64,000 bases of DNA from Magallana gigas (lineage: Eukaryota), in the NCBI RefSeq assembly GCF_963853765.1, contig NC_088857.1, forward strand, positions 56,544,001 to 56,608,000. Reading direction: 5' to 3'. The stretch's first letter is position 1. Every line of letters begins with the position of its first letter. The translations under genes and the position numbers were made by a program. Positions 36,118 to 64,000 of this stretch are shown piece by piece. The notes under the pieces are model-generated. The model ran no database searches. It had not been told where the DNA came from and was given only the letters and a program-made list of their open reading frames with translations.

Positions 36118-36249
36118 NNNNNNNNNNNNNNNNNNNNNNNNNNNNNNNNNNNNNNNNNNNNNNNNNNNNNNNNNNNNNNNNNNNNNNNNNNNNNNNNNNN
36201 NNNNNNNNNNNNNNNNNNNNNNNNNNNNNNNNNNNNNNNNNNNNNNNNN
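36118..36249. other. Assembly gap (132 N)
   Basis: Run of N about 60 bp downstream of the stop codon of the secreted coiled-coil gene. Confidence 1.
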
Positions 36250-39207: not shown

Positions 39208-41363
39208 CATAAAAAGTATGGCAACACTCTTTCAAAAATAAAAAAAAAAGAAGCAAAAAAGGGATTTCAAATTCTAAACCATTGACGCATTTAACATATT
39301 GATATGCATTGTTTATAATATTTAAATATAACACGTCTTGTCAATAAAAAGGTATGGAAAACCTTTTCTGAAAATACACTTCATTATAAGGTTAATTGCA
39401 AGCAAGTCACACACAATTCCGCTTTATCTATAATAGAATTTACATAATAATTTATCATAATGTGGTGGATGAACTAAATTAAGTATTTTATTTTGAAAAC
39501 TTAAGTCATTGAGGCTTCCGTCGAAGATGAATTAATGAGATGATTTTATGAATAAATCATTAAATTTTCGATCAAATATGATTGTTTATATGCACTTACT
39601 GGATAAACCCAGAGATGCATTTAAATCTATTTCGTGTTGTGAATTTCAATGTTGATTTCCAAACCTATTATTGAGAATAGATCTGAATAAATTTTGTGGA
39701 AATTCCATATAATTTAGATACATGTATACTGTAGACGTACTTTTGTCCGCGTTGTATTAATTTACGCTATGAACGCGGGCACAAGTTTTCCGCGGAATTT
39801 TTTTCCCCATTGTACTTAAAGGGGCATGGTCACGATTTTGGTCAAAAATTATTTTTCCGATTTTAATATTTACAATGCTGCAGAAAGGCATTTTTAATAG
39901 GCAACAGAAATTTGAGTATCATTTGTTGACCTATAAGCGAGTTACAGGACTTGAAATTCTTCGCTGTGTAAACAAAGCGTTTGTTTTCATTTTGAACGTG
40001 GAGTAAAAATTTCAGTTTTAAACCTAAAACGAATGTTTTAAAGGAACTGTTTATTTATGCTTAAAATAAATAAAAAGATAGACAAATAAGCGGCAAAAGA
40101 TATTTTACTGCTATATTGAACATGTGTAATCAAAAACAGGGCACGAGCCTTGTTTACACGACAAAGACTTGTGAGCCCTGTATTTTGCATTTTACTCTAC
40201 AAATGACTCTCAAATTTTATTTGATCATTAAAAATGCATTTATAAAGCATTGTAAATAATAAAAACATAACAATATAATTTGACCAGACCATAAAAAGTA
40301 TGGCAACACTCTTTCAAAAATAAAAAAAAAAGAAGCAAAAAAGGGATTTCAAATTCTAAACCATTGACGCATTTAACATATTGATATGCATTGTTTATAA
40401 TATTTAAATATAACACGTCTTGTCAATAAAAAGGTATGGAAAACCTTTTCTGAAAATACACTTCATTATAAGGTTAATTGCAAGCAAGTCACACACAATT
40501 CCGCTTTATCTATAATAGAATTTACATAATAATTTATCATAATGTGGTGGATGAACTAAATTAAGTATTTTATTTTGAAAACTTAAGTCATTGAGGCTTC
40601 CGTCGAAGATGAATTAATGAGATGATTTTATGAATAAATCATTAAATTTTCGATCAAATATGATTGTTTATATGCACTTACTGGATAAACCCAGAGATGC
40701 ATTTAAATCTATTTCGTGTTGTGAATTTCAATGTTGATTTCCAAACCTATTATTGAGAATAGATCTGAATAAATTTTGTGGAAATTCCATATAATTTAGA
40801 TATACTGTAGACGTACTTTTGTCCGCGTTGTATTAATTTACGCTATGAACGCGGGCACAAGTTTTCCGCGGAATTTTTTTCCCCATTGTACTTAAAGGGG
40901 CATGGTCACGATTTTGGTCAAAAATTATTTTTCCGATTTTAATATTTACAATGCTGCAGAAAGGCATTTTTAATAGGCAACAGAAATTTGAGTATCATTT
41001 GTTGACCTATAAGCGAGTTACAGGACTTGAAATTCTTCGCTGTGTAAACAAAGCGTTTGTTTTCATTTTGAACGTGGAGTAAAAATTTCAGTTTTAAACC
41101 TAAAACGAATGTTTTTAGGAACTGTTTATTTATGCTTAAAATAAATAAAAAGATAGACAAATAAGCGGCAAAAGATATTTTACTGCTATATTGAACATGT
41201 GTAATCAAAAACAGGGCACGAGCCTTGTTTACACGACAAAGACTTGTGAGCCCTGTATTTTGCATTTTACTCTACAAATGACTCTCAAATTTTATTTGAT
41301 CATTAAAAATGCATTTATAAAGCATTGTAAATAATAAAAACATAACAATATAATTTGACCAGA
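39208..41363. repeat. Near-identical ~1.08-kb tandem duplication (39208-40288 / 40290-41363)
   Basis: Both copies start cataaaaagtatggcaacactc and end aatttgaccaga; only a few small indels differ. Confidence 0.93.
39820..40287. mobile_element. Kolobok-like MITE, copy truncated in its right TIR
   Basis: Left end TTAA|aggggcatggtcacga; breaks off at ...tttgaccag, the junction of the 1.08-kb tandem duplication. Confidence 0.82.
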
Positions 41364-41473: not shown

Positions 41474-41557
41474 ATATAATTTAGATATATATAATTTAGA
41501 TTTATATAATTTAGATTTATATAATTTAGATTTATATAATTTAGATTTATATAATTT
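41474..41557. repeat. 15-bp tandem repeat (atataatttagattt) x ~5.5, ending ~40 bp upstream of the P1 ATG
   Basis: Read directly; each unit junction contains TATATAA. Confidence 0.92.
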
Positions 41558-41598: not shown

Positions 41599-42785
41599 AT
41601 GAGGGCTTTGGTCTTCCTGACAATCACGGTTGCCGCGCAAAGTATGTCAGTGTATGAAAAATAATAAACTTAACATAAAATAATGAATGTTGTAATATAC
41701 AATTGTGATAAAAACGCCATTACTATGTTTTGACATTTATAGAGTGAATATTTTTATTACAGTGTATGCACTCTGAGGAGATATCGGCCATTATTACTCT
41801 ATTATTTTGCTTTGTAGAATGTCCGTATGGCGTAACAAGGGTGGCCTGTTTAATAAACCCGTGTCATCTTCACGATCAACTACAGAATTGCGCTAATATC
41901 CCGTCTGCTCGCTGCGTGTAAGTGTCAGAGATAAGAAATAACACAGAAGCTTTGTAGAATACTATGTGCATTATTATATATTCTTCTTAGAGAAACTTCT
42001 TATCGTGTAACTTTTTTCTTTTCTATTTCATCCAACCTTGAAAATGATGGATCAATTATCTGTATGGAAATTATATCTTAAATCTTATTAGCCTGTTTAT
42101 TTTTCTACACACTATTTTTTTTACCCAACTGCACACCATTACATCGTGAAATTGATTTTTAAAGAATACTTGCATATGCAATATCTTATCATTGAATTTT
42201 AAAAAGAAATATTTAATCTTTTCATTGACACTACGTCGGGTCATATTTTTTCACAACTTCCGGAAGTTTCAGTACGAAAATTAAACATCAACATCCACCG
42301 TTTTGTTTTTCGAATAAACAAATTAGCACACTCTTGTTTGACAACTCATTCCCGTTAAAGTTACGATTTACCAGTTTATTGATTGTAAGTTTAGGGTCGC
42401 ACACGAACCATTTAACACGTCGATCGATTGTGAATATTAATTACAGAAATATTTGTACATACATGACTGATTCATTTTAACATTAAATGTCCGTGCTTTG
42501 GTGTACAATACTTTTAATTAAGTCTTGAATAATTTTATACGTTCCTTATCATAATAAAATGTTTAAAATAAGATAAAGCTAAAATGATCTATGTGTCTTA
42601 AAATATTTTTCTCTATACATGTATACTAATAGTGGGAATTTGTCATGTAACTGCAGCCTAAGATCATGAGTTGTCTTTCTTTTCTTTGCAGTTCTGATTA
42701 TTGCGGTGGGTGCTACAGACGCTGGTACGTTGGGTGGCATGACGTCACACGTCCGTGTTGGCCTGGTGAAAAACAGAGATATTAA
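41599..42785 (+). CDS. Secreted 8-Cys peptide, paralog P1 (78 aa). Exons 41599-41641, 41818-41917, 42692-42785
   Basis: Phase 1 and phase 2 GT-AG introns. MRALVFLTITVAAQ-KCPYGVTRVACLINPCHLHDQLQNCANIPSARCVSDYCGGCYRRWYVGWHDVTRPCWPGEKQRY*. Exon phases and Cys framework are shared with P2 and P3. Confidence 0.85.
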
Positions 42786-43204
42786 GAATGTCATGTTATA
42801 ATTGTTTTAAAAATAAATGATTGAACATTTCTTATTGAGTATATTTATGAAGAAACGGGATAATGAACAAAGTCTATTAAAAAGTGATGATATGATTAGG
42901 GGCTTGTCTGCTATCTTGGAAGAAATCGCTGATATTATTAACGCCACGGTAATTTGTTTAAAGAATAAATCAGTGATTTCTTGTGTTGATTATACGAATA
43001 AGTAGAAAGGTAAATAGGTAAAATGAAATATATATATTTTATTCGATGAATAACAAATTTTTTTAAGATGAAATTGAAAATGCTTTCGAATCAAAGTTTA
43101 GAAAGAAACCATCATTATTATCGAAGAATAAAGAATGATGATAACATTTTTAATAAAATGGTTCACGTAAATTGACTAACCTTGCCATCGGTCATTTTCA
43201 AAAC

Positions 43205-43790
43205 TATTTTGTTAAAAACAATACGGAACACACCCACTCCGAAGAGTGGATATTAAAAAGATGCTTGAGTTTTTGATAGACAACATCTATGTAGTTTTTG
43301 GAAATCAAGTCTTCCAAGAATCTGTTGGAATTCCCATGGGTACCAATTTTGCCCCATTGTTAGCAGCCATTTTTTTGTATTCATACGAAACAGATAATGA
43401 AAAAAACTCGTCGTGGCCTTTACCTCAACATTCAGGCATATCGACGACGTATTATCAATTAACAATTGTTACTCCATACTTACGTCGACTTATCATAATC
43501 AAGTGAACAGTCTCGACTGAAGTCATCTTTTCGTAAGTTTTATGGTCGATACTACGACCTTGTCAGCAAATACAAAATTCCATAGACCATATTAAATAAT
43601 TACCTAATTCTCTACGTTTTTTCCTGAAAACAAAGAGATCTGGTTTGAGCGGTCAGCAGAGGATGCTCACTCCTCCATGGCACCTGATCTAATCTCTATG
43701 TTTAAGAGGTCCATGTTTGATCTGCTCCTGTGTCGTATTTTACCTTTGGATGTTTAATTTTAACTATTCGTTATCACTACGTGTCATTTT
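43205..43790 (+). mobile_element. Penelope-like (Naiad-type) retroelement fragment, internally deleted
   Basis: Encodes DIKKMLEFLIDNIYVVFGNQVFQESVGIPMGTNFAPLLAAIFLYSYE, a frameshifted YIDD-region remnant and SSFRKFYGRYYDLVSKY, then the tail motif ggtcagcagaggatgctcactcctccatggcacctgatc. Confidence 0.75.
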
Positions 43791-45175
43791 TTGTGAAAAT
43801 TTTTGAAAGTCGACAACGACAACTCGTTTCTTTTAATGTCCCTATATTTTGAAATAAATAGTGAGCAAATTGTGTGCCATTGTTTTTCGTTTTTGTTTTG
43901 TGTTTATCAATCTACGTTTACTGAGGGAATTCACAAGAATAAAAAGTAAAAGTTACGCGTCTTGTCACATCTGCTTTTGTCCTGACGCGGTTCTTACCGA
44001 ATAGAATGGGACCTTGATGTCCACACATTCATGTTGAGGGAAGGCTTTTTTTTACTGGATATTTTGTTCTTTATTGGAAGCCAACACTTTAGGAAAACTT
44101 ATGTGAAACAATTAATGCATAATTTACTCCTTGGATTTTTTAATCAATTTGTCTTTGTAAGAAGATATAGGTACTCATAAGCAGGACTCATAGTTTTGTT
44201 CACTTAAACATGATTAATGGAAATTTCAGATATTCTGATCAAGATCCTTTCCTGAAAAAATCAAATAGATTAAAGTCATTGAACATATCAACAATATTGC
44301 CAAACAGACTAACTTAAATATTTGTGGGTTAATCTGTGTCTTTCAAAATTACTTAGATTTTGAGTTTCAGGCAAGAAATATAAAATTAATGTTAGTACCA
44401 TTTATCTATTGTTTGAAATAAATTCGTTGCTGAAGTGAATCACTTGCGCACTTGCACTATTACAGAATCCAGTGCAGTAATACCCCCTTCCATTTTCTTC
44501 CCCACTAAAACTGTCTTAAGGGTTGAAGCTAAATCATTAACTGTCCGATATTTTAACAACAGAGATTTCAACATAAAAGGGTGGCAGCAGTCTTCCAGAA
44601 ATCAAAGAAGCTGATACGAAATTTTGAATTCTAAACCATTGACGCATTTGACATATTGAAATGCACTATATATCATTTAAAAAAACACTGCTCTTTTCAA
44701 TAAAACCCCATGGAAAACCTCAATTTAAGGTCAATTGCAATCAAGTCATGTACATTTCTTCTTTGTTTTATTAAATAAAAACATCTACATAATCTGTTAA
44801 CCCAATTCCAAAAGTTTCTACCGGATATCGATTGACACAATGAACATTTTTATTTTGGAAAATTTAATCCAAGAGACGTCGTTCAAAAATGAATCGGTAG
44901 GATGATTTTTATAAATGATTCAATAAACTGTTGATCAAATTTGATTAAATACAAAGACGGTCGTGCCGTGACATGCATGTCTATATGTTTGTGAACTTTT
45001 CGGATAAACCCATAGATGATTTTAAATTTTTTTCGTGTTTTGAATTTTGATTCCGATCATCCGAACTTATTTATGATGATAAATCTGACTACATGTTGGT
45101 GGAAAACCCATATCAAGAGGATATATATAGTTGGCTTATTTCTATAAACATGAACATTGACTATCGTTTTTCAAC

Positions 45176-46361
45176 ATGAGGACTTTTGTTTTCTCACTAG
45201 CTTTGCTATTCCTGACTTTCATGGTTACCGCGCAAGGTATGTTGTATGAAAAACTGAAAACTTAAATAAAATTATAATACTCGTTTAATACCATTGCGAT
45301 ACATTTGCAAACATTTTGCTTAAACTTTATAGAGTAAACGTTTTAGTAATAGTGCTTGTTCGCTGAAAAGTGTTATATCAACATTTTTTTCTTTAGCCTA
45401 TTCAGAATGTCCATACGGAAAACCAAGGGTGCATTGTTATGTTAACCCGTGTGAGGATTGGAGGGAACAGTGGAATTGCGCTAACATCCCGAATGCTCGC
45501 TGCGTGTAAGTGATTAGAAATAAAACAGAAATTTTGTAGAACACTATGCGCGTTCTTCTATGTTCTTTTAAGAAAAACTTCTTATCTTGTAACTAACCCT
45601 TTTTCGGGTCTATTTTATATCATCTTAAAATTGAGATCAATCATTTGCATGGAAATTATATATCCATGTTTAAATCTTGTTATAACATTTAATTTACTGT
45701 TTATTATTCTACACCGTATTCTTTTACTCGAATGTACTCCTTTAATTATTGTACAGATCATGAAATTGATTTACATGTATATGCGATATCCTATTATTAA
45801 ACTACAAGATAGATATGGATAATTTATGTTCACAATTACTGAAGTTTCAGAACAAAAATAAAAAATCAATTGTTTTGTTTTTCAAATAAGCGAATTTATT
45901 AACCACATTTTTTGTTTGACAAATCAATTTTGCGTTAAAATATACCGATTAATTGTCAGTATAGGTCGCACGTGAACTATTTAAAAAGTCGATCGATTTT
46001 TAATATTATTTACAGAAATATTTGTGCACACATGACTGATTCCTATTAACAATAAATTTCCGCGCTTTAGTTTACAATACTTTAAATTAAGTCTTGGTAA
46101 ATTTAGACGTACCTTATCATAATAAAACGCTTCAGAATAAGATAAAGCTAAAATGATATATGTGTTTTCCAATAATTGTTTTATTTCCCTATAAATTTAA
46201 TAATAGATTGGAACATTGTCATGTAACTGCAGCTTAAGATCAAGAGTTGTCTTTCTTTTCTTTACAGTCCTGATTATTGCGGTGGATGTTACAGACGCTG
46301 GTACGTTGGGTGGCATGACGTCACACGTGATTGTAGGCCTGGTGAAAGACGCAGATATTAA
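45176..46361 (+). CDS. Secreted 8-Cys peptide, paralog P2 (84 aa). Exons 45176-45236, 45406-45505, 46268-46361
   Basis: MRTFVFSLALLFLTFMVTA-QECPYGKPRVHCYVNPCEDWREQWNCANIPNARCVPDYCGGCYRRWYVGWHDVTRDCRPGERRRY*. Introns and flanks are visibly homologous to P1, indicating a segmental duplication. Confidence 0.88.
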
Positions 46362-47516
46362 GAATATCATGTCATAATTGTTCAAAGAATAAATAATTGA
46401 ACTTTTTTATTGAGTATTTTAATGACGAAACGAGGTAATGAAATATCAATGAAACAGTGCTGATTTTATTGATGCCACGGTGAATTGTTTTAAGAATAAT
46501 TAAGTGAATTCTTTTGCTTATTATCTGAACAAGTACACAGGTGAATGATTAAAATCAAATAGAAGATTTTATTTTCATGCATCTATTTTCATACATTAAA
46601 AATGTATTGATGTATTTACAAAAGTTTGCCAGACTACGTAGTGAAGGGAACTATCCTTATTGTCGTAGAAGTTTAAAATAATTACATTCACTCCCTTAAA
46701 TTTGAAAAAGTTGTTCTCTTTGACAATACATTGATAAATTACTTTTATACATAACTATAAAATATAAAAGGTAAAAAAAGCTTTTCCCATCCTCTCCTTC
46801 GACACCCTAACACCCTTTTAAAGGGCTATATGTACCTTAATGCATAACTAAGAAATAACAGGAAACAAACGGTAACCGATATCAATTTATCATACAATTT
46901 CTAATCGAGTTTTAAAGTTAGTATAAATAAAACAAATATACCATTGGTATTGAATAAATCAAACCGGATCATATCAGCTGGAAGGTTGATGACATGTTTC
47001 AAAAATGGCAGAAAACAAACATTAATCAACATCACTTAATCAGAAAATATTAACGAGTCTTAAAAGTACAAGCGAATCGATCAAACAATACTATAATTGA
47101 CTTTTGGAAAGGTCTTAACTCAATCATTTTCATAGGGAAAACGCGTCCAATTATGCAAGTTAGCTTGTAATATACATTTATGACAAATGACGGTCTCTTC
47201 AAGATAACATACCGGTATTTAAATATAAGATGATCGCGCGTCTTACGAGAATATTCATTATCAATCAATTAAATTGTATTTAGTTTCATGTTCAGAGTAC
47301 ATTTCATTTGCTGGTTTTTAATATCCATTCATTAGTATGCTGGAACAAAAATGTCATACAATAACTCAGCTGTTTTTATTTTTTGTAATTTGATTTTCTT
47401 TACAAAAGACAAAAACCAGATTTTACTTTTTTCTTTTTTAACTATTTTTATTAGTTTCATTTTAGTGTTTCACATAAAAAAAAAAAACTAGCGACACTTT
47501 GAATTTTAGTACAATA

Positions 47517-47648
47517 CACAGGATGAAGCTCTGCCATTCAGTCAACTGAAAGGTGACTGAAAGGTAACTGAAAGCTATGCCATTCAGTCACCTTTCCAGA
47601 CCATTCAGTTAACATTCAGTTGACTGAATGGCAGAGCTTCATCCTGTG
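47517..47648. mobile_element. 132-bp MITE with CAC termini, perfect 34-bp TIRs and a 3-bp TSD (ATA); CACTA/CMC-like
   Basis: ATA|cacaggatgaagctctgccattcagtcaactgaa...ttcagttgactgaatggcagagcttcatcctgtg|ATA. Confidence 0.85.
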
Positions 47649-48584
47649 ATAGAAATTGAATTAAACATGATATTTACAGTACTAAAAACCTCCCCACTAT
47701 CATGACAAATAATATGTCTTATTTGACAAAACATTTATCATATACCAATTTATTAGAAAATCTAAAATAATCTTTACCTGAAAATAGAACAAAAATGTAG
47801 ATTACAAGACGTGACATTGGCAAACAAAAAACAAACAAAAAACTAAAACAAAACACAAAACTCGTAAGTCTATAAAACATATGAGTGTTTAAATAGTGTA
47901 AAAATAAAACAAAGTGTACATACAGATATTCTGAGTGTAGATTTCGTTGTTTCGTCGTAAGTTATTAAGTAAAAGTAAAATAATATCTTGTTGATAATTA
48001 TTTCACTAAAACTTTTTTAAACAATAGATATAAAGAAAAAACAAACGAAACTTAACACAATTTTTCTCTAGGACAACAAATGAAGACCTTATCAACAATT
48101 CTACATAAGATTGTTGGTACGATAATTTAAGCTTTTATCGCAGTGTTTTGCACATAAATATATAAAAATTATAAGAATTATACTTTTTCTATTATATGCA
48201 AGTAAAAAAAACAAATTAAAACTTTCCGCGCATAAATAAATGTTTAATTACTTATCTTTTCAAAAAGATTTGCATATGATGTGGTCACATGCATTTTACA
48301 TTATATGCCAAAAATTACATTACACTGGATAAGTGTGTTTTATTACGCTTATATGAAGTCAATTTAAACATCTCATCAAAGAATTACTTTTTTTTTAAAG
48401 CATGCATGTATTTGGGGGAATGGGGCCAGGGGCATTAATTTTTTTCATCATATATGTATCATGACAAAAAGATACGATTTTATCAAAAACATATAAATGA
48501 AATATAACATTCTAAAAATGTGTAATTTACTTCGTCATTTCCGCACACTTGGGAAAAAAGAATCAGACATACATTTATGATAGT

Positions 48585-49345
48585 ACCATAAACATAGAAC
48601 CTATAGAACCATAAGCATAGAACATATAAACCATAAGCATAGAACCATAAACATAGAACCTATAGAACCATAAGCATAGAACCAATAAACCATAAGCATT
48701 AGAACCTATAAAACATAAGCATAGAACCATAAACATAAAACCTATCGAACCATAAGCATAGAACCTATAAACCATAAGCATAGAACCATAAACATAGAAC
48801 CTATAGAACCATAAGCATAGAACCAATAAACCATAAGCATTAGAACCTATAAAACATAAGCATAGAACCATAAACATAAAACCTATCGAACCATAAGCAT
48901 AGAACCTATAAACCATAAGCATAGAACCATAAACATAGAACCTATAGAACCATAAGCATAAAACCAATAAACCATAAGCATTAGAACCTATAAAACATAA
49001 GCATAGAACCATAAGCATAGAACCTATAGAACCATAAGCATGGAACCAATAGAACTATAAGCATAGAACCAATAGAACTATAAGCGTATGACCTATACAA
49101 CCATAACATAAAATCAATAGAACCACAAGCTTAGAACCTATAGAACCATAAGCCTAAAACCAATGGAATCATAAGCATAGAACGCATAGAACCATAAGCA
49201 TAGAACCTATAAAACCATAAGCATAAAATCAATAGAACCACAAGCGTGGAACCAATAAACCATAAACATAGAACAGATAGAACCATTACCATAGAACCTA
49301 TAGAACTATAAGCATAGAACCAATAGAACCACAAGCATAGAAGCG
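48585..49345. repeat. Complex satellite of catagaac/cataag-type monomers with a 141-bp higher-order repeat
   Basis: The rare variant 'cattag' recurs at 48697, 48838 and 48979 (141-bp period). It accounts for the spurious ORFs at 48575 and 49131. Confidence 0.9.
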
Positions 49346-50077
49346 AATTATCTTTCGATATAGCGCACACTCACGACCGGTTACCCGTAGACGTTTTAGA
49401 ACTATATTTAAGCTAAACATGGCTCGTAAATAGGCACTGTCCGCCATATTTTCTCTCATAACCGTTATCCCTACAACCCCTATATAGGCTGGAGACCTCT
49501 TAGCAATTTAAAGTATTTTGCTGTAAAAGTCTCGCCTGTGTGGACGTGTGCCTCGGCGTGTTTCTCGGTCGCGATGACATTATCAAATTTTACAAACTTT
49601 TTTCAAGCCAGAAGAATACTAACAACAATTAAACTGGTCAATATATAATTTACAAACAGAATTTGCTCATAAAATAAGTATAAAATGCACAAATTCCGAA
49701 GACCACGAAAGGAATACTACACGTCGGCCACGAGTTTCAGGTGTGCAATCGGGTGTAAGGAAATCAAAGGGTTTATATAACAGGTACCTGTGTGACGTTG
49801 CCTATTTACTAGTGGTGTTCAGCTTATGTTTATGGTTCTATGTTGACTTTAGGACCAGAATAAAAAAAAATGTGTTTTCGGACGAATGTTTGAAAAATAG
49901 TAGAAATACAAAATAACCCCGAAACTTAGAAAGACGTGTGGTCTACGTATTTTAGACGATTGTGTAACCCACAAAAGGTTCATCATTTGAAGAGGACATT
50001 GAAACTCGAGACTCAAATCATAAAGATCGCTTAGAACGCCGTATGGTAGACCCATCGTGCAAATCAAAAGCTGATCT

Positions 50078-50806
50078 GGCTCCGATTTCACAAAAAACTT
50101 CAGTTTTTACCTAAGTTTAATCTCAATTTACTCAGCTGAGATTTTTTTCTCAAATTGCATTTCACAAATCAAACTTAGTAATTTCTCAGCTAAGTCGAAT
50201 TTTCAACAGAGGAAAATTGGATTTAATTAACAAGAGTCATAAAATGTTAATCAGTCATGAAATGTATACTTTGTTATGCTATATATAGATTACATATCTA
50301 CATGATCTTATATATCAAATAGCAAACAAAATCATGTTTGATTATCTTAAATTCATTTGAAAGTAGAATCACTGCACAGTTCTTCCATTTAACACAAACA
50401 AATGAATTAGTTCCCTTTGTTTACATTTTTGTCAAGGGAGATAACGTTAACTCCGCCAAAATTATTATTTTTAAATGAAAAAAATATTGATCAACCGTGC
50501 ATTAAATATTGCATTTACGCTGATTATTGAGTGGAATAGATCTAAGAAATGAACATAACAGATGATATAATACTGATGTAAATGACATATTCGTATTTGA
50601 GATTTGACTTAAGTCTGCCATGGTGGTAACTTAAGTTTTTTCTCAAATTGAGTAAAAAGCACAACTAAGATTTTTTTGTGAAATGCAGATTTGAGTTTTC
50701 TCAAATTTCAGAAAAAAACTTAGATATTTGAGGAAAAACTCAGACTTTAGTCTGAGATTTGTTGTAAGTTGTTTTTGTATGTGTGTGTGTGTGTGAAATC
50801 GGAGCC
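50078..50806. mobile_element. Non-autonomous TIR element (ggctccgatttcac...gtgaaatcggagcc), superfamily uncertain
   Basis: 14-bp perfect terminal inverted repeat, extended imperfectly inward, with a (GT)n expansion inside the right TIR. No clear TSD. Confidence 0.55.
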
Positions 50807-52330
50807 TGAACAGATAAATAGATATGAGTAAAGTATGTTGTGTCGTAAACAAATTCAAGGCCGGAAAATTCACAGGAATTGACTAACTGCCTTTGAAGTC
50901 TTTAAATCAGCAAATGTTATACAAATGCTAATTATTTTCTACTTCACTTCTTTCATCCGCAAATAAAATATTTCTTTTCTAATCCATAATAAAACACAAA
51001 GACAAAACCTATAATCGATTGTTTATTATTAGATATGAGTTGTGTACTCAGCTTTAATTTACATAATTATTAATAATTCCGGACCATTTGTGATCCTTCA
51101 TCTGTTGAACGTATACAATTGCTTGGTAACTTTTCCTGTAATTTATTAATTAAAATAAATTTGATATACAAAGTGTGATACTGTAAAACTACCTATAATA
51201 TACAGAATATTTCGATATTAAATCAACCTTCACGAACTTTGAACTATATATGCTGGACATCAATATAAACTACAAAAGAAAACAAACAACTATAATTATA
51301 AAACGTTTCAAACAAACAACACCTCATTATCCAAACTTGTCATACTTGCTATTTATAGCTGAGTACTAACTCGAATGACTTTAAAAACCCCGAGATAGAA
51401 CTTAAATACCCTTAACCGAAGCACACAGAAATAATTACGCAATATCTCTACTCCTGATACTAGTACTACATATTTCTTATGAAAACGAAAAGAAATTTTA
51501 ATATATGGTGTCGTGCAGTCATCTTCCCAATCTAAAACGACAAATCCTCCGACCTTAGAATTCACTTAATTACAGAGAAATATGTCTGCACGTGTAGTGG
51601 CTATAAGGTTTACAGTTCCGTCCTAAACAATAGACTCACTGCGTTCTTAGATGACAACGAGCTTTTTAGAAGATAACAAAACGGATTTCAAATGCATAGA
51701 TCGATCGTGTCTGGGTTACATTTTTTCTTGAACAATATCATTCAGAATATTGCCTACATAAAGCGTTTGACCCTTTAGATAGAGAATTGTCCTCTAACCA
51801 ATGGGATTGACGAAAATATTTACAACAATACGATATCGCTTTATTCAAAGTATGTTCTGACAAATATCTAAAAGTGATATTTGATATTTGATATGTGAGG
51901 GACAACTGCTGAGTGCCAGCGAATATTTAAGCTTACCACTAGAGCTTACAAGTTGAAATTTGTTTATATTATATGTTTATTAAGTATTAATGGATAAGGA
52001 ATAATTTTTACGGGTGAGCAGCTGGTTCCAGGGTTCATCTTGGTTTCTGTATTCTCTTTACTATCAAACAGCTGTGGCAATTACCGCCAATAAATTTATA
52101 AATTTCTCACTTACAGTTTTTCTTAATTTTCTATATACATCTCTGTAAACAATATTTTGTCCTTGATAAATATTTCTTAGAAATTTCTGATTCATACTAT
52201 CAATCAAATTAAACAATTTTAATGCGTTGTTAGATATTATGGTTATCAGACCAAGGAAAATAAATTACATTTAGTAGATCAAAGACACTATAAATATGAA
52301 AAAAAAATCGAAAGCCATTTAATTAATAAC

Positions 52331-55300
52331 ATGGCGATGACATTATATGCCTTATTGCTTGTCTTTGGATGCTATCTGGTTTTTACCTCTGGGCAGACAG
52401 GTATGTTCTAACGCAATGCTACCATAGAGTTGTAGAAAAAGTTTAACCTATATACGATAATTGTGATAAAAAATCCAGAAATGTAAACTTGCAAATCCGA
52501 ATATGCAGTCGTGTTGGTGTGTGCGTCTGAGTATTAATGTGTGTTATAGTCGTAAAGAAAACAAGTATTCCTTTTAAAAGAATGCATGATCGGCATGTTT
52601 TATCATTGGCTGTTAATGTAATTCAAAAGCATTAAGGTACATACAATAAACACGATAAATAAGATACGTCTCACTCTTTCGTTTATTTCCGAAACAGGAA
52701 GGGATAAATAAACTTTATTTTTATTAGGCGAATTGTATTTCCGATTAATATTGTAAGAAGTCCGTCTTCTTAATCACTTTGCAGTGCAAACGTAGGAACC
52801 ACTTTTTATATTCACAAGCAATTATTAAAAAGCGTGAACGCATAGGTTTGTCAAAGTCATAACATTAATTGAAAACAGCCAAAATTAAAGATCTGCCATA
52901 ATATCATCTTACAGAGGACTATGTAACATTTACCGGACAGTTCCGACTACTTTGGCCCATTTATGATGATTATGACTGAACATTTACTGTTAAAATTCAT
53001 GAGTTATATTTTATTTCTAAATAAAGAAACAAACCTGTCAGAACTGTCAATCAAGGAGTATGGGATGCAGGTGTCCCGAGTCTCTGAGTCTCCCACATAA
53101 CTATCAAGGTCATAGCATGGCTATCTGGTTAAATATTCTTACGCATTGACAAAGAAAAGCGTGATTTAAATTATTATGTATGTAACAGTATAAGATTTTA
53201 CTCTCAAGGGAGACGCATTCGAATAACGTTTTTAGTACTTTACATGTACGGCTGTCATTGCGTAGAAAATAAAACAGTACAAGGCACAATGCATGCACAA
53301 TTAGTAAAATTTGCCAGATGCCTAATATGGAGCCAGAAAAAGGCATGCCGTAATCGCCAGAATGGGGATAGAATAAACAGCATATTATAGGGTATAATCA
53401 TGTTATCTCTTGATAACAGCAAATTTTAGAATGTAATGAAGTATTATTTTTCAAAAATAAATAAATTTTGAGCTTGCTATACACTTTAACCGTATTAAGC
53501 GTAGAAAATAAAACAGTACACGGCACAATGCATGCATAATTAGTAAAATTTGCCAGATGCCTAATATGGAGCCAGGAAAAGGCATGCCGTAATCGCCAGA
53601 ATGGGGATAGAATAAACAGCACATTATAGGGTATAATCATGTTATCTCTTGATAACAGCAAATTTTAAAATGTGATGAAGTATTATTTTTCAAAAAAAAA
53701 TAAATTTTGAGCTTGCTGTACACTTTAACCGTATTAAGCGAGATAGCAACACCCCCATTTTTTTAAATAAAAAATTCCAGTATTCGAGTATATGACGTGC
53801 CAAAAGCTACACGATCTTCGCCCGACTACCGTCATAATGGAGTACGAGGTTAAAGGGACTCTCTAAACGGAACACATTTATCACTTTCTCGACAAATTGT
53901 AAATGGTTTACTTTCCAGTCGGTTTTTACAAGTATTTGCAACACTAGGAAGGACACATTTATATATCATTATACTTTTATGTTAAATACTGAAATCTGAT
54001 TGGTTTATTCGCAGTTGATAATCCGTTCTATTACTCTCAGCGTACGAAACACATTTGGCATTGGGTAACACAACGAATTATTACATGTGCCTAAATTATG
54101 CGCGTACGGTTCACCGTAGAATTCACGTCATTTCTATATAAAAGCAGTAATAATTTCTCTAAAATTAAGACATTCAGTATAAATATTTAATGGTGCCTAT
54201 TTAGGAGGGTAAAAGTTGAAATTGATATCCCTCGAAAACCATTGTCAACCTTCGCTTTGCGTCGGTTGACAATGGTTTTCTCAGGTAGTCAATTTCAATA
54301 GTTACCCTCCCAAACAGGCACCATAGAAGGACCTTAGAAGGGAAACACCTTAATTGAGCAATTTCTATCAACAAACCTGTCCATGAGAATCTTCGCGAGC
54401 CCTGCATGTGTGTCGTACAGCCCCCGTTTCTTCGTCATTCAGCGAACAAATTGGTCTCCAAAATAAATTTACGAGTTGCCTCGGTCGGGGCCTCTATTAA
54501 GTATTTTTAAAACCTTTTTTTGGCTAACTCAGTGAAGAAAGCAGGCCTTCCCTGTATCGTGCTTGCCTTTCTGTTTTGTTTACAGTAAATACGCATCGTA
54601 ATAGTATAGAAGCCGGAGCGTCGTAACACGTTGCAATGTATTTATTTATGGCCCGCAGATAATTATTTATTTTGGCAAAGTAATTGAATTGAAATAGTGG
54701 AGAAGTTTCTAATTTTATGAAAGTTTATACAATTATAAGCTGTACAAAAATACTGAACCCGATCGTAAAATCTTTCAAGCGTTAAAGGCAGGGTTTTAAA
54801 AATATTTTGATCGTCTTATTTCTAGAAAATAGTACGATAGTACTTATATATTTAAGTTTACTAAAACAGTAATACCTGAATTTTATGATCACCATACTCC
54901 ATTTCGTCGACTACAGCATGTCTATCCCGCAGCAAGCAGTTGTCTTTAAAGGTCATGTAAAATTCGAAAAACTTGTAGACGTTACAAATGTCAATTTATA
55001 TCATGTCAAATGTGCTATATCCGAGCATGAAGAAACAAATTAAGGAACTACGGATTAAAAAAGTGCAAAGTTAAAGGTTATATTTATTAACAAAAACAAT
55101 AAAGCTGCAAAATGTGCGCCCTGCGAAAAAAACCTGAATCAAATCCAAATGCGTTTATGCCCGAGTTTTATATTGTACACAATCAGAATACCACTCATTC
55201 ATACTCAGACTCACACACCAACACGATTGCATATCAAGATGTTCAAGTTTACATGTCTGGATTTTTTAAAAGGACTACCCTCCATGATATACAGGAAGGG

Positions 55301-56031
55301 TAGATTCATAATACAATGAGGCTTTAACAGAAACACGTACTTGCTTGATGATTTAAATATAAATCAATTTGGGTTAGTGAAATCGCGGCTCCATTTGTTG
55401 TTTTTTTCAGTGTGTCCTGATGGTTCAAACCCGGTGAACTGTTTTATCAATCCTTGTCAGGAACCTAATACTGGTTGTTACAATATACCTGGAGCCACCT
55501 GCCGGTAAGATAAGGAATATTTACAATACGATAAACCATTAAAGCTTGGAGCGTCTACACTCTTCAACAAAATTGAAGTGTTATTTACAATATGGTCTTT
55601 CCTTTTATTACCCTCTACTTAATTTTTTTTTTTACAAAATGAGTGGGTTTTTTCATTTTCAATATAAATTTTTCATTATATATAATAAATATATATTTAT
55701 AAATTTCTTCATTTCATTATTGTATAGAATAGAAATGAACTATCAATTTCTAAAGGAAAAAAATCAAAGTTTAAAAAACTTTTGTCATTTATATAAAGAA
55801 TATCTGTGATACTAAAAAAATAAATGATTACATACAATGTAAAACTTTAGATTCATCCACCATATACCTGTTAATTGAACGTATTTTACATAACGAATGG
55901 ATTTACGAAGGACTAGCCTACTAACGAACAAATGTTGTTTGTGTCGTTACAGGGCATACTACTGTGGCGGGTGTTTCCGGCGCTGGTATTTAGGGTTCTT
56001 TGAAGTGACCAGCTTCTGTTATCCAGGCTGA
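52331..56031 (+). CDS. Secreted 8-Cys peptide, paralog P3 (80 aa). Exons 52331-52400, 55411-55504, 55953-56031
   Basis: MAMTLYALLLVFGCYLVFTSG-QTVCPDGSNPVNCFINPCQEPNTGCYNIPGATCRAYYCGGCFRRWYLGFFEVTSFCYPG*. Same intron phases (1, 2) and the same 8-Cys framework as P1 and P2. Confidence 0.85.
53260..53740. repeat. 239-bp tandem duplication in intron 1 of P3
   Basis: gcgtagaaaataaaacagtac at 53260 and 53499; the copies are nearly identical. Confidence 0.92.
54190..54324. mobile_element. 135-bp palindromic (fold-back) element
   Basis: atggtgcct...gagggtaa..gttgaaattga...gaaaaccattgtcaacc-loop-ggttgacaatggttttc...tcaatttcaa..ttaccctc...aggcaccat. Confidence 0.65.
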
Positions 56032-57200
56032 ACTGACCATCTTTCTTTGTGCTGAATATAAGAATAATAAAAATTATGAGCCTATTCAGTTAGTTTATGT
56101 TTGAATTTCCATGATGCTGTAGAGAGATTTCAACATGAGTTCAACATGCTTATGATATACAGAATTTTAAAAATTTTCTCTGGTGGAAATATGGATTTAA
56201 TAAAGAATTTTTACTTTCAACAAAAATATAGAATGCAAAAAAATCGCTCACAGTTTTACTTATACATGAATTTACGCATTAGTTAAAATAATATATCAAA
56301 AATTTTGAATGGCCTTGTAATGTTATGTGTACTAAAATAAAAATGTCAGACATTTCAGACTTTTCACTGCATAGTTAACACACGTTCCTGTTGTAATGGA
56401 TAAGCCATGGATATATTCCAGACAGGATTATGGGGTTTATTCTACTTTGGTCGTGTTTTACATTAATGTTTTAAGAGAAAAAAAAATACAACAAGCTAAC
56501 AAGAAAAAACGATATGCACGATGTTTTCTTCTCATTTTCTGCAAATTATTTATAGTATCTAACATTCTTGAAAAAAAATATGCAATGTTCGATTTGGTTA
56601 TATATCATGAAACTTTTACAAAAGTATGGCACAAAAACTAATTAAAGCATCACCTCAAAAACAAAACACATATGCTACAACTGCAACGTTAATATTTTCA
56701 TTTAGGTTTCTCTTTCTTATCAGTCTTTAAAGACATGCATTGTTTAAGACTGTAAAAGAAGATTTATTAGATAGAAATATCTTTTTTGAAGATTGTATTT
56801 GATGACAAGGTCGTTGCATCGACCACAGAACTTACGAAAAGAAGACTTCAAACGAGACACTGTTGATAGTCCTGTTTTATCAACTTGCTTGTCAGTAGCT
56901 TGCCTCGCTTTAGAAACTGTTCATATGAAGAGCATGCCCTTGTGTATCGAATTAACTGAGGGACAAAAACACCATATGCAGATGATGAAGGTATATAACT
57001 ACATAAGAAAGGAAAGTTGACCATGGAAAAATTGAAGTAATTGCGTTTATCATGAAGTTTTGTTTTTAGGTTACCATCAATGTCCATTTCCAGTAGAATA
57101 TCCAAATAAGAAACAAATGACGCAGACTCTGTGGTATCTTTTATTTCAAGTTCACTGGGATATATCGAGTCGACGTAAGTATGGAAATAACAATTGTTAA

Positions 57201-57529
57201 AGTGGAATAACACACCTGGAAAAAGTCACTCAAATAAACTGTAAAATATTTGATTATGAAAGATATAATGATAAATAAACTATACATATGTCAAAAAAGC
57301 GAAAATTTGCATATTGGGGATAAAAATTGAAAATTAAAAAATCAATTCAGTAAGTAACAACAAAAGCCCCTGTGGGATTCGAACTTGGTATGTACGGATC
57401 ACAAGCCCGACACTTTAACCATTCGGCTATGCGGAAAGCTATATGTTGCCGTCGATAAAATCCTCTTAATAAAACAGAATGTCGTTTCGATCAGAGGTCA
57501 GCCATTTTATGACGATGCGTTATTCCACC
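57201..57529. mobile_element. Kolobok-like MITE (TTAA TSD) inserted into the Naiad RT; carries a tRNA-like segment
   Basis: TTAA (57197-57200)|agtggaataac...gttattccacc|TTAA (57530-57533). Removing it restores LSINNCYF just after the YIDD motif. Confidence 0.8.
57366..57432 (-). pseudogene. tRNA-like sequence (Thr-TGT-like anticodon loop), SINE head or pseudogene, inside the MITE
   Basis: The - strand reads tagccgaatggttaaag (A box), tcggg-cttgtga-tccg (anticodon arm) and agttcgaatc (B box). The acceptor stem is degenerate, so it is not called a functional tRNA. Confidence 0.6.
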
Positions 57530-58329
57530 TTAATTGATAATACGTCGTCGATATACCTGAATGCTGAGTTGAAGGTCACAGCAAGTGATTTTTTTTTTCA
57601 CGAACAGGTTTTTGAATAAATTCTGCTTCATAAGAATAAAAAAAAGGGCTTCTAACAATTGGGAACAATTGGTACCCATGGAAATTTCAACAGATTGTTG
57701 GATTTGATTTCCCAAAACTACATAGATAGTGTGTATTAGAAACTCAAGTATCTTTTTAATGTCAACTTCAGAGTACTTGTGAGTGCAATCAGAATGGTTT
57801 TTAACAAAATAATTTTTAAGATTTCCAATGACAAGTTAAGCATTTTTACAACTTACATTCTATCAAAGAAACAAGTGTCGATGATACCAAAAAGACTCGA
57901 TTTTAAATTGTCCTAGGAAATGATTGTATAAAGTGCTGAAAAATAGTACGTTTTGATGTTATTGATTTTAGTAAGATTTTGAGACGTCAAAGTTTCTAAT
58001 AAATCTTTAGAGTTTTTAGTATCCACGTCTGATTCAAATTGCTTCTAGAGTATATTGTTTTTTCTTCACTACTGTAAGAATTTTAGTAAGGAGCAAAGAG
58101 AGAGGTTTGGTAGAACATTTACTGGAGCCTGCTATATATCTGTGTTTGTAAGGATTTTGTGAAACATTGGAATCCAGTACAAATAAGATAAATCAAATTC
58201 ATTTTGTTTGTTGGGGATATTAAAGATATCAAAAACCGATTTATGATTTTGAAGTATTTCCTGCTCGGAAAGACTGCTAAACATTAGGCGCACGGCGGGT
58301 GTGACCGGTCAGCAGAAGATGCTTACTCC

Positions 58330-63359: not shown

Positions 63360-63379
63360 TTGCCCTGCAGTGGAAGAGA

Positions 63380-64000
63380 CTACTCTTTTGGGTCACTCCT
63401 GATTTTGTCTTCAAATGGTTTCTTGAAATACCTACCTCTGTTGTTTCCTCTGTTGTACGAATGCCCCCTCCGAAATGCTCGTCCTCTGCCATAAAACTGA
63501 GTGTTTGGAGGAGATAATTCATTACTTTGATTATGCATTAGTTCTACTTTCTCTAACCTTTTTTCAATACTTTGTAGTGTCTTGAGTAACTCCTCGTTAG
63601 TTGTAGACTCTTTCTCTACTCTTGCTGTACCAAGGTTCTGATGAGCTGTCGACTTTTCGCTGGCCTTACTGCTGCATAGTTCCTCCTGTTCAATCTTTCT
63701 GATTTCTTTAAGTAAACTCTGAAAATCTTTCACAGAATCAAAAAGATACCTAGTTGCACTTCTCAAAGGTTTGCTTTTAAGACCTGTCCAAAATTTACTA
63801 CACAAGATAGATTCTTTTGCAGCATCACTGATATGACCTTGTTTGATAGCTTTACACAACGTTGACTCTAATCTTGAACCATATTGAACAATAGACGCTG
63901 TGTCCTTTTGACAATCATTATAAAAGCCCTGCATTAAAGTTTCACTGCTACTGACTAAGCCGTAAAAACCTTCAAGTTTAGCTAAGACCTTATCTACCGT
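63380..64000 (-). CDS. gag: Gypsy gag, C-terminal part (5' truncated by the window; PNMA-like, no CCHC knuckle)
   Basis: The frame is open from the window edge (TVDKVLAKLEGFYGLVSSSETLMQGFY...) to TAG at 63380, and ends in an RGR/RG-rich basic tail. Confidence 0.88.
   Translation of the reverse strand, partial: TVDKVLAKLEGFYGLVSSSETLMQGFYNDCQKDTASIVQYGSRLESTLCKAIKQGHISDAAKESILCSKFWTGLKSKPLRSATRYLFDSVKDFQSLLKEIRKIEQEELCSSKASEKSTAHQNLGTARVEKESTTNEELLKTLQSIEKRLEKVELMHNQSNELSPPNTQFYGRGRAFRRGHSYNRGNNRGRYFKKPFEDKIRSDPKE

What the first reader, a model, noticed from the sequence alone, without database searches (positions are those of the whole stretch)
41599..56031. Tandem cluster of three secreted 8-cysteine YCGGC peptides missed by the ORF track
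Seen: three 3-exon genes with identical intron phases encode a signal peptide plus a ~60-aa mature peptide with framework C-P-x-G-x5-C-x2-NP-C-x6/8-C-x-NIP-x-A-x-C-x3-YCGGC-[YF]-RRWY-x-G-x3-VT-x2-C-x-PG. Established: C-x4-C-x-G fits the gamma-core signature of cysteine-stabilised antimicrobial peptides, and the Arg/Trp-rich RRWY segment suits membrane or polyanion binding. The framework does not match the bivalve defensin, big defensin, macin, myticin or mytilin patterns as I know them. I recall similar NPC...YCGGC modules only inside larger uncharacterised invertebrate proteins. Inference: a stand-alone, possibly undescribed family of defence, toxin-like or matrix peptides. P3 ends in Gly (possible Pro-amide), while P1 and P2 have a basic extension after the same PG.
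Basis: partly seen in the sequence, partly recalled or inferred. Interest (0 to 1): 0.88.

Follow-up and report, generated by a model that had tools for sequence, protein, structure and literature searches.

The report
Three tandem secreted eight-cysteine peptide genes

Summary
Three intact three-exon genes lie on the + strand: P1 41599-42785, P2 45176-46361, P3 52331-56031. All use GT-AG introns in phases 1 and 2. Each encodes a signal peptide plus a 57-65-residue peptide with eight cysteines (spacing 8-4-8/6-7-4-2-14).

They are not an isolated novelty. An exon-3 profile found 24 true relatives among 1.84 billion proteins. The peptide is one copy of an uncurated ~52-residue module with no Pfam, NCBIfam or PDB-sequence match.
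- The module occurs singly in Magallana gigas, Biomphalaria and Bradybaena (there also as a tandem cluster).
- It occurs in 2-14 copies in proteins of bivalves, gastropods, a sea cucumber, a tardigrade and an amoeba, some of them combined with Kunitz or WAP protease-inhibitor domains.
- A phase-2 intron that splits the codon after the fifth cysteine is shared with a snail gene and a scallop gene.

The predicted fold is a disulfide-bound coil plus one beta-hairpin with Y-C-G-G-C at the turn. The top PDB match for both models is the snail carboxypeptidase inhibitor NvCI, but it is not significant. Most modules are acidic, so the antimicrobial reading is weak.

Best reading: secreted single-module, protease-inhibitor-like peptides. 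Function is inferred and expression is untested.

The parts
41599..41641 (+). P1 exon 1: start codon and short signal peptide; donor GTATGT, phase 1
   Evidence: tblastn self-match
41818..41917 (+). P1 exon 2: first half of the module, cysteines 1-5; ends with a split Val codon (phase 2, donor GTAAGT)
   Evidence: aligned with family
42692..42785 (+). P1 exon 3: second half of the module (Y-C-G-G-C hairpin turn, cysteines 6-8), basic tail, stop; AATAAA 27 nt after the stop
45176..45236 (+). P2 exon 1: start codon and 19-20-residue signal peptide; phase 1
45406..45505 (+). P2 exon 2: cysteines 1-5; phase-2 donor GTAAGT
46268..46361 (+). P2 exon 3: cysteines 6-8, basic tail, stop; AATAAA 27 nt after the stop
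52331..52400 (+). P3 exon 1: start codon and signal peptide; the only phase-1 signal-peptide candidate in the 5.4 kb upstream of exon 2
55411..55504 (+). P3 exon 2: cysteines 1-5 (C3-C4 loop of 6 residues); phase-2 donor GTAAGA
55953..56031 (+). P3 exon 3: cysteines 6-8, three-residue tail ending in Gly, stop; 90.9% nt identity to a contig (L005) that carries exon 2 of the M. gigas relative P0009
41605..43043 (+). P1 copy of the duplicated unit. It aligns with 45200-46573 (the P2 copy) at 70.6% over 1497 columns, introns included. Upstream, 40294-40792 also aligns with 44575-45113.

Best explanation
P1, P2 and P3 are paralogous genes from tandem duplication. Each encodes a pre-peptide whose mature part is a single copy of an uncurated, widely distributed eight-cysteine extracellular module of about 52 residues. 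The module's hallmarks are C-P near the start, x-P-C, C-P-x-x-P-x-A-x-C, then Y-C-G-G-C, A/R-R-aromatic, and V-T-x-x-C.

Shown:
- The gene structure and the intactness of all three genes.
- End-to-end membership in this module family.
- The shared intron positions.
- The occurrence of the same module in multi-copy proteins, some of which also carry Kunitz or WAP protease-inhibitor domains.

Inferred:
- The signal peptide is removed, probably before an N-terminal Gln.
- The domain folds into a small four-disulfide body with one beta-hairpin whose turn is Y-C-G-G-C. The conserved aromatic residue of strand 2 packs in the core.
- The peptide is secreted and acts as a tight-binding inhibitor of extracellular proteases, of the host or of microbes.

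Two binding modes are conceivable:
- Contact through the variable loops. The C3-C4 loop is 4 residues in the canonical module, 6 in P3 and 8 in P1 and P2, and it is the most diverged stretch between P1 and P2.
- For stand-alone forms only, insertion of the free C-terminal tail into a metallocarboxypeptidase, as in the snail inhibitor NvCI.
For: Gene models: canonical splice sites, phases 1 and 2, no stops, and a poly(A) signal 27-35 nt after each stop.

Family:
- A profile of the three exon-3 peptides found 25 proteins at E <= 1e-3 among 1.84e9. Of these, 24 are true and 7 reach E <= 1e-10.
- A module HMM built from 22 database proteins, without the window rows, matches the joined P1, P2 and P3 over positions 1-53 of 54 at 66-69 bits.

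Gene-structure homology:
- The Bradybaena similaris gene for P0025 has three exons with intron phases 1 and 2 at the same positions. It sits in a tandem cluster of three genes for 81-82-aa products.
- In the Pecten maximus three-module gene, the same phase-2 intron splits the Val codon after cysteine 5 in every module.

Domain company:
- Apostichopus 'papilin' P0002 has 8 modules and 7 Kunitz domains (Pfam E = 3e-122). The one Kunitz stretch whose position was listed lies between two modules.
- P0031 carries 8 Kunitz stretches.
- P0004 has a WAP domain (E = 1.2e-11) followed by 5 modules.
- In the Mizuhopecten cluster, P0019 (2 modules) groups with a member that UniProt names 'WAP domain-containing'.
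- A transcript-like contig carries a module ORF next to a Kunitz ORF.

Fold:
- Two AlphaFold models were made, P0009 (pLDDT 77.5 overall, 81-92 in the mature part) and P0029 (pLDDT 72.4). Both give one beta-hairpin.
- For both models the top PDB match out of 350,542 chains is NvCI, chains 4a94_C and 5mrv_C, with 24-35% identity over 52-55 columns.
- NvCI has a two-stranded sheet, a Trp three residues after a Cys in strand 2, and a C-x7-C spacing (PMC5511257). The module has the same three features.

P1 versus P2: exon 2 is less conserved (69% nt identity) than intron 2 (83%), while all cysteines are kept. Fast-evolving contact loops would look like this.
Against: - Function rests on guilt by association and on a structural match that is not significant: Foldseek E = 1.2-2.7, probability 0.11-0.18, TM 0.32-0.47, rmsd about 7 A.
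- HMMER never links the module to NvCI or to any PDB chain.
- Modules embedded in multi-domain proteins have no free C-terminus, so an NvCI-type tail mechanism cannot be the general one.
- Kunitz- and WAP-bearing proteins can also be matrix components.
- No expression evidence was obtained. The searches for P1 found no protein of comparable length in the 5.8e9-cluster library. The M. gigas relative is represented only by a gene model and by genomic read-through ORFs.
- P1's leader is unusually short.
- dN/dS between P1 and P2 is about 0.7, which is also what relaxed constraint would give.
Confidence: 0.45

Rival explanations
1. The peptides are cysteine-stabilised antimicrobial or toxin-like defence peptides that act directly on microbial membranes or polyanions through a gamma-core and the Arg/Trp-rich stretch.
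For: - They are small, secreted, cysteine-rich and encoded by a tandem cluster. The exon for the variable half diverges fast: exon 2 is 69% identical against 83% for intron 2.
- P1 and P2 carry net charges of +3.9 and +2.9.
- C-x4-C-x-G is present.
- The Y-C-G-G-C lies at a hairpin turn, as a gamma-core would.
Against: - P3 is neutral at -0.3.
- The 69 family modules have a median charge of -2.3, and only 13% reach +2.
- The second Arg and the aromatic residue of 'RRWY' are conserved in acidic modules too, and they lie in strand 2 of the hairpin.
- No helix long enough for a CS-alpha-beta fold is predicted.
- Neither the exon pieces nor full-length relatives gave any Pfam hit of any family.
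- The gamma-core formula is permissive.
Confidence: 0.15
2. The module is a structural or adhesive building block of extracellular matrix, mucus, shell or byssus proteins, or a binding module or ligand for a receptor. The single-module peptides would then be soluble competitors or signalling peptides rather than inhibitors.
For: - Arrays reach 14 modules (Solemya velum P0001) or 8 (Apostichopus).
- Sources name the relatives papilin, kielin/chordin-like and prestalk-like, which are matrix or morphogen-binding names given automatically.
- The modules are rich in aromatic residues.
- Arrays are built by duplicating one 180-nt exon, as in many matrix proteins.
Against: - Those names are automatic and mutually inconsistent.
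- The only partners confirmed by Pfam are the inhibitor domains Kunitz and WAP.
- A single 6-8 kDa module cannot cross-link anything.
- The best structural match, weak as it is, is an inhibitor.
Confidence: 0.15
3. The three genes are silent or decaying copies. They would be duplicated single-module fragments of a multi-module ancestor in a transposon-rich region, with no present function.
For: - The searches found no protein matching P1 exon 2 among entries of 31-99 aa, nor exon 3 among entries of 24-77 aa.
- P1 exon 1 is 18 nt shorter than P2 exon 1.
- dN/dS is about 0.7.
- Transposon fragments and a minisatellite lie between the genes.
Against: - All three reading frames are intact and all 12 splice sites are canonical.
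- All eight cysteines are kept. So are 14 columns of exon 2 and 15 columns of exon 3 that are invariant among the three copies, despite dS of 0.2-0.5.
- The HMM match runs end to end.
- Poly(A) signals sit right after the stops.
- The same three-exon stand-alone form is kept in a gastropod and in M. gigas.
Confidence: 0.1

Closest known systems
Stand-alone predicted proteins of the same module: Magallana gigas UniRef A0A8W8NWI7 (P0009, 77 aa), Biomphalaria glabrata KAI8752082 (P0011), Bradybaena similaris BFZ05248 (P0025)
   Same: - Signal peptide plus one eight-cysteine module. P3 is 76.6% identical to P0009.
- Bradybaena has the same three exons with intron phases 1 and 2, and it also has a tandem cluster.
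   Different: - P1 and P2 have a longer C3-C4 loop (8 residues against 4-5) and a basic eight-residue C-terminal tail.
- None of these relatives has been characterised. UniProt's name 'ShKT domain-containing' is not backed by Pfam.
Multi-module secreted proteins: Pecten maximus XP_033728451, Mizuhopecten yessoensis XP_021351240, Solemya velum KAL5020019, Apostichopus japonicus PIK43392 ('papilin'), Littorina saxatilis KAK7090651, Paramacrobiotus XP_055346561, Balamuthia KAL6066238
   Same: - The same module, scoring 35-90 bits per copy against the local HMM.
- The same phase-2 intron after cysteine 5 in Pecten.
   Different: - They carry 2-14 copies in one chain, in several cases together with Kunitz or WAP domains.
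- Their modules are mostly acidic.
- The Solemya modules have moved one cysteine (spacing 8-4-4-12-2-1-12).
NvCI / NpCI, metallocarboxypeptidase inhibitors of Nerita snails (PDB 4A94 chain C, 5MRV chain C; UniProt P86912)
   Same: - A small molluscan secreted peptide of about 53 residues with a two-stranded antiparallel sheet and three loops.
- A Trp three residues after a Cys in strand 2, a C-x7-C spacing, and a short tail after the last Cys (PMC5511257, PMC6780499).
- It is the top Foldseek hit for both models, at 24-35% identity.
   Different: - NvCI has six cysteines, the module eight.
- The hairpin loop between the two strand-linking cysteines is 10 residues in NvCI and 2 here.
- The match is not statistically significant, and HMMER does not see it.
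- P1 and P2 have eight-residue tails. Embedded modules have no free tail.
MEROPS family I84 inhibitors of bivalves (cvSI, scSI)
   Same: They are molluscan, about 7-9 kDa and secreted. Their genes have three exons and form tandem clusters, and the cysteines are shared between exons 2 and 3 (PMC9198434).
   Different: - I84 has 12 cysteines, with C-X5-C-X4-C-H-C and C-X7-C-X4-C-T-C motifs, and a different intron-phase arrangement from the 1 and 2 found here (PMC9198434).
- The peptides here have 8 cysteines with another spacing. The resemblance is an analogy of organisation, not membership.
Bivalve cysteine-stabilised antimicrobial peptides (defensins, mytilins, myticins, big defensins, macins)
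   Same: They are small secreted cysteine-rich peptides from multigene clusters. P1 and P2 are cationic.
   Different: - No sequence match was found.
- No helix packed on a sheet is predicted.
- The family as a whole is acidic.

Membership tests
Unnamed eight-cysteine 'Y-C-G-G-C' module family (as in M. gigas A0A8W8NWI7, P. maximus XP_033728451, A. japonicus PIK43392) | Eight cysteines with spacing 8-4-(4 to 8)-7-4-2-14 | tested here: met
   P1 and P2 have 8-4-8-7-4-2-14 and P3 has 8-4-6-7-4-2-14. The commonest family pattern is 8-4-4-7-4-2-14.
Unnamed eight-cysteine 'Y-C-G-G-C' module family | End-to-end match to a profile built from other members | tested here: met
   The local HMM was built from 22 database proteins without the window rows. 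P1, P2 and P3 match positions 1-53 of 54 at 66-69 bits. The exon-level profile search returned 24 true relatives.
Unnamed eight-cysteine 'Y-C-G-G-C' module family | Phase-2 intron splitting the codon right after cysteine 5 | tested here: met
   The same position and phase occur in the three window genes, in Bradybaena similaris and in all three modules of the Pecten maximus gene.
NvCI-type metallocarboxypeptidase inhibitors | Significant sequence or structure similarity to NvCI | tested here: not met
   NvCI is the top Foldseek hit for both models, but with E = 1.2-2.7 and probability 0.11-0.18. There is no HMMER hit at E <= 10.
NvCI-type metallocarboxypeptidase inhibitors | Six cysteines paired 9-23, 15-51 and 27-38, holding a two-stranded sheet (PMC5511257) | tested here: inconclusive
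   A hairpin is predicted. The spacings of cysteines 3-8 resemble NvCI's except for the hairpin loop.
NvCI-type metallocarboxypeptidase inhibitors | Short free C-terminal tail after the last cysteine (2 residues in NvCI, 2-5 in other carboxypeptidase inhibitors; PMC9966942) | tested here: inconclusive
   P3 and M. gigas P0009 have 3 residues. P1 and P2 have 8.
NvCI-type metallocarboxypeptidase inhibitors | Inhibition of M14A carboxypeptidases | not testable with these tools
   -
ShKT domain (the name UniProt gives the closest relative) | Match to the ShK/ShKT profile, with six cysteines in the ShK pattern | tested here: not met
   P0009 has no Pfam family at E <= 1, and the exon pieces have none. 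The peptide has eight cysteines in a different arrangement.
Gamma-core / CS-alpha-beta antimicrobial peptides (defensin, mytilin, myticin) | Helix packed on a sheet by disulfides, a cationic surface, and a match to a defensin-type profile | tested here: not met
   No helix was predicted in one model and only a 4-residue helix in the other. P3 is neutral and the family median charge is -2.3. No Pfam hit was found. Only the permissive formula C-x4-C-x-G is met.
MEROPS I84 (cvSI/scSI) | Twelve conserved cysteines, six in each of exons 2 and 3 | tested here: not met
   There are eight cysteines, split 5 + 3 between the exons. The I84 features come from PMC9198434.
Kunitz, WAP, Kazal and other curated inhibitor domains | Pfam profile match within the module itself | tested here: not met
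   The Kunitz and WAP hits lie in the partner domains and not in the module.

The most novel reading that the evidence does not exclude
NvCI is the picomolar carboxypeptidase inhibitor described so far only from Nerita snails. It may be a six-cysteine offshoot of this much wider eight-cysteine module family, which reaches from amoebae to echinoderms. The module would then be a new, unnamed class of protease-inhibitor domain. The stand-alone peptides with a short free tail (P3 and its M. gigas relative) would be metallocarboxypeptidase inhibitors, and the arrays with Kunitz or WAP domains would be compound inhibitors.
Probability: 0.25. Interest if true: 0.65.

Novelty: new member of a known kind. 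Interest (0 to 1): 0.45.

Why it matters
The three genes themselves are new members of a protein family that already sits in the databases, but only as uncharacterised and inconsistently named predictions.

What is worth noting is the family.
- It is a compact eight-cysteine module with no Pfam entry, no solved structure and no literature found here.
- It is spread over molluscs, an echinoderm, a tardigrade and an amoeba.
- It is repeatedly joined to Kunitz and WAP domains.

Defining it would improve the annotation of many 'hypothetical' invertebrate proteins. If the weak link to NvCI holds, it would also give that inhibitor an evolutionary home. For mollusc immunity it would add a candidate inhibitor family organised like I84.

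Tried and rejected
Searches that found nothing:
- Pfam and NCBIfam on the six exon peptides: nothing, apart from one chance NCBIfam match at E = 0.11.
- PDB sequences with exon peptides, exon profiles, family profiles and P0029: only chance hits at E >= 0.6. One, at E = 5, is to a cone-snail 'Superfamily Pmag-02' chain sharing C-P-D...P-x-N-C. It was not seen by Foldseek and I did not pursue it.
- The search for homologous proteins with the stop-free frames around P1 exon 2 (57 aa) and exon 3 (44 aa): no candidate. The length limit means that exon 3 could only see proteins up to 77 aa.
- The search for homologous proteins with P0009: only itself and genomic read-through ORFs.
- Literature searches for the motif strings, for 'prestalk D11' and for NvCI homologues: nothing relevant.

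Ideas rejected:
- MEROPS I84, because it has 12 cysteines.
- ShKT, because there is no profile match.
- P0021, a false positive (a bacterial repeat protein).
- The bacterial promoter/terminator scan, which is irrelevant to a eukaryotic locus.

Full report
**1. What is in the sequence**

Reading the DNA gives three models on the + strand.
- P1: exons 41599-41641, 41818-41917, 42692-42785; 78 aa.
- P2: exons 45176-45236, 45406-45505, 46268-46361; 84 aa.
- P3: exons 52331-52400, 55411-55504, 55953-56031; 80 aa.

All six introns are GT-AG. The donors are GTATGT for intron 1 and GTAAGT or GTAAGA for intron 2. Intron 1 is phase 1 and lies one residue before the first cysteine. Intron 2 is phase 2 and splits the codon right after the fifth cysteine.

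AATAAA follows each stop by 27-35 nt. In the 5.4 kb before P3 exon 2, the only signal-peptide-like exon with a phase-1 donor is the one at 52331.

A local tblastn of the three models against the whole window finds exactly these three copies. The cross-paralogue E-values are 3e-5 to 1e-10 for the divergent P3, and nothing else scores below E = 0.1.

**2. The peptides**

- The cysteine spacing is 8-4-8-7-4-2-14 in P1 and P2, and 8-4-6-7-4-2-14 in P3.
- Counted from the residue before the first cysteine, the mature parts are 64, 64 and 57 residues. Their net charges are +3.9, +2.9 and -0.3.
- By the -3/-1 rule, cleavage would fall before a Gln in all three genes and in the oyster relative. This is inference.
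- P1's leader is short, because its exon 1 is 43 nt against 61 nt in P2.

**3. The duplication**

The P1 and P2 loci align over about 1.4 kb, introns included, at 70.6% identity.

Segment by segment, exon 2 is less conserved (69%) than intron 2 (83%), and exon 3 is 89% identical. Nei-Gojobori estimates are dN/dS = 0.76 for exon 2 (dS 0.52) and 0.56 for exon 3 (dS 0.19).

The 5' half is therefore older, or the 3' half has been homogenised. Constraint on non-cysteine positions is weak, yet all cysteines are kept, together with the 14 (exon 2) and 15 (exon 3) columns that are invariant among the three copies.

**4. How the searches were run**

The joined precursors were not sent to any search or folding tool. 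The exons were joined as they stand only in local scripts, to test the splice model.

- The exon peptides hit nothing in Pfam, NCBIfam or the PDB sequences.
- The word-indexed library gave no candidate for the frames around P1 exon 2 or exon 3.

**5. Relatives**

A profile of the three exon-3 peptides (A1) was searched against 1.84 billion representatives. It returned 25 proteins at E <= 1e-3, seven of them at E <= 1e-10. One, P0021, is a false positive.

The rest carry the same module of about 52 residues, with 1 to 14 copies per chain.
- Magallana gigas: 77 aa, stand-alone, auto-named 'ShKT domain-containing'.
- Biomphalaria glabrata and Bradybaena similaris: stand-alone.
- Pecten maximus ('prestalk D11 protein-like').
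- Mizuhopecten yessoensis ('kielin/chordin-like'). UniProt names a cluster mate 'WAP domain-containing'.
- Solemya velum: 14 modules.
- Candidula and Littorina.
- Apostichopus japonicus ('papilin').
- The tardigrade Paramacrobiotus.
- The amoeba Balamuthia ('SMB domain-containing', 'Bowman-Birk type...').

The names contradict each other, and Pfam has no model for the module. The family is real but uncurated.

A local HMM built from 22 of these proteins, without the window rows, matches the joined P1, P2 and P3 from end to end at 66-69 bits. That result confirms both membership and the exon 2-exon 3 junction.

P3 is 76.6% identical to the M. gigas protein, while P1 and P2 are 45-48% identical to it. 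A contig that carries exon 2 of that oyster protein aligns with the window only over P3's exon 3 (90.9%) and not over the introns. The window therefore comes from another species or from a diverged paralogue, and I did not identify the organism.

**6. Gene structure elsewhere**

- In Bradybaena similaris, the gene for P0025 has three exons with intron phases 1 and 2 at the homologous positions. It lies in a row of three genes for 81-82-aa products.
- In Pecten maximus, every module is split by the same phase-2 intron in the Val codon after cysteine 5. There is no intron between modules. The two internal module exons are exactly 180 nt and carry the second half of one module plus the first half of the next.

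The stand-alone genes are thus a signal exon plus the two half-module exons. The arrays grew by duplicating the 180-nt exon.

**7. What the module does**

Nothing is known directly. There are three lines of indirect evidence.

(a) Domain company.
- In the sea cucumber protein, eight modules occur with seven Kunitz domains (Pfam E = 3e-122). The Kunitz stretch whose position was listed lies between two modules.
- P0004 has a Pfam WAP domain followed by five modules.
- A transcript-like contig has a module ORF next to a Kunitz ORF.

(b) Fold.
- AlphaFold models of P0009 (pLDDT 81-92 over the mature part) and P0029 (mean 72) show a coil-rich body and one beta-hairpin.
- The invariant Y-C-G-G-C forms the turn, and the R-R-W-Y (elsewhere A-R-W/F-Y/F) stretch forms strand 2.
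- For both models the best PDB match is NvCI, the carboxypeptidase inhibitor of the snail Nerita versicolor, at 24-35% identity over 52-55 columns.
- The scores are not significant: E = 1.2-2.7, probability 0.11-0.18, TM 0.32-0.47. HMMER never finds NvCI.
- Per PMC5511257, NvCI has cysteines at 9, 15, 23, 27, 38 and 51, a Trp at 42 in strand 2, and a two-residue tail.
- The spacings C15-x7-C23 and C38-x3-W42 recur in the module, as C4-x7-C5 and C7-x3-aromatic. The hairpin loop, however, is 10 residues there and 2 here.
- This is a lead, not a demonstration.

(c) Charge. Of 69 near-complete modules, the median net charge is -2.3, and only 13% reach +2. Cationicity is a local trait of P1 and P2, not a family trait.

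**8. Verdict on the interpretations**

The best-supported reading is that these are secreted single-module members of this family, most likely protease-inhibitor-like. Identity is near certain, and I put function at about 0.45.

- The antimicrobial reading (0.15) is weakened by the charge data, by the structural role implied for the 'RRWY' strand, and by the lack of any defensin-like profile or fold.
- A matrix or ligand role (0.15) and silent copies (0.1) are not excluded. No expression evidence could be obtained here, and the protein libraries held no transcript-derived copy of the oyster stand-alone forms.
- The Pro-amide idea for P3 is not supported by the M. gigas relative, which ends in Arg.

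- The N run at 36118-36249 was left alone.
- The retroelement at the right end of the window was only annotated with Pfam. It was not fetched, compared or repaired.

Noticed in passing
window 59344-63934, - strand: A Ty3/gypsy-type LTR retroelement coding region. It has a gag-like ORF followed by pol with reverse transcriptase, RNase H, integrase zinc-binding and integrase core domains. Pol is in two reading frames, which is one frame change inside the reverse-transcriptase part. LTRs were not looked for. Nothing was fetched, compared or repaired.
   Followed up: partly
window 2788-3255, 11404-11916, 16452-16901, + strand: Three paralogous long open frames of 149-170 aa. They share a P-P-P-Y-P-G-K...Y-L-P-S-Y motif near their start and continue into acidic, Ser-rich tails. 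Pfam finds no family. They look like the last exons of a second tandem gene family.
   Followed up: partly
window 21672-23984, + strand: Exons for CUB, fibronectin type III and CUB domains (Pfam E = 2.6e-5, 9e-6 and 1.1e-15). A 201-aa Ser/Thr-rich, mucin-like open frame follows. This is probably one multi-exon gene for a secreted or membrane protein.
   Followed up: partly
window 48580-49342: A minisatellite between P2 and P3, with periods of 8, 23, 82 and 141 nt and 71-85% matches. It accounts for the strong AT and GC skew in the 48-50 kb bin and for the repetitive 147-aa ORF on the - strand.
   Followed up: no
window 53260-53740 (inside P3 intron 1); 40000-40288 versus 41076-41363: A 239-nt unit is duplicated in tandem at 96% identity inside the 3-kb first intron of P3. 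A 289-nt segment is repeated at 99.3% identity just upstream of P1.
   Followed up: no
window 43181-43506 (+), 57530-57835 (-), 30932-31285 (+), 56848-57213 (-): Fragments of interspersed repeats with open frames and no Pfam family. One fragment lies between P1 and P2 and has a 74%-identical inverted copy after P3. Two others share a ...L-D-I-L-L-E-M-D-I-D-G-N-L... frame.
   Followed up: no
window 41474-41557: A 15-nt AT-rich microsatellite of 5.6 copies, directly upstream of the P1 start codon. It supplies the run of TATATA matches there. P2 and P3 instead have a single TATAAA at -33 and -42 from the ATG.
   Followed up: no
P0008, P0014 and P0004 (relatives, not in the window): In some multi-module relatives, the module alternates with a second unnamed cysteine unit of about 40 residues, containing ...C-G-R-G-S-S-G-x-C-P-G-x-S-Y-C-D... 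and ending in C-C-C. This unit also has no Pfam family.
   Followed up: no
Solemya velum P0001 (relative): In 11 of 69 near-complete modules counted, the spacing is 8-4-4-12-2-1-12 (3 more have the same spacing plus one extra cysteine), as read in the Solemya modules. Cysteine 5 is replaced and a new cysteine appears two residues after cysteine 7. This 'moved' cysteine could help to deduce the disulfide pairing.
   Followed up: no
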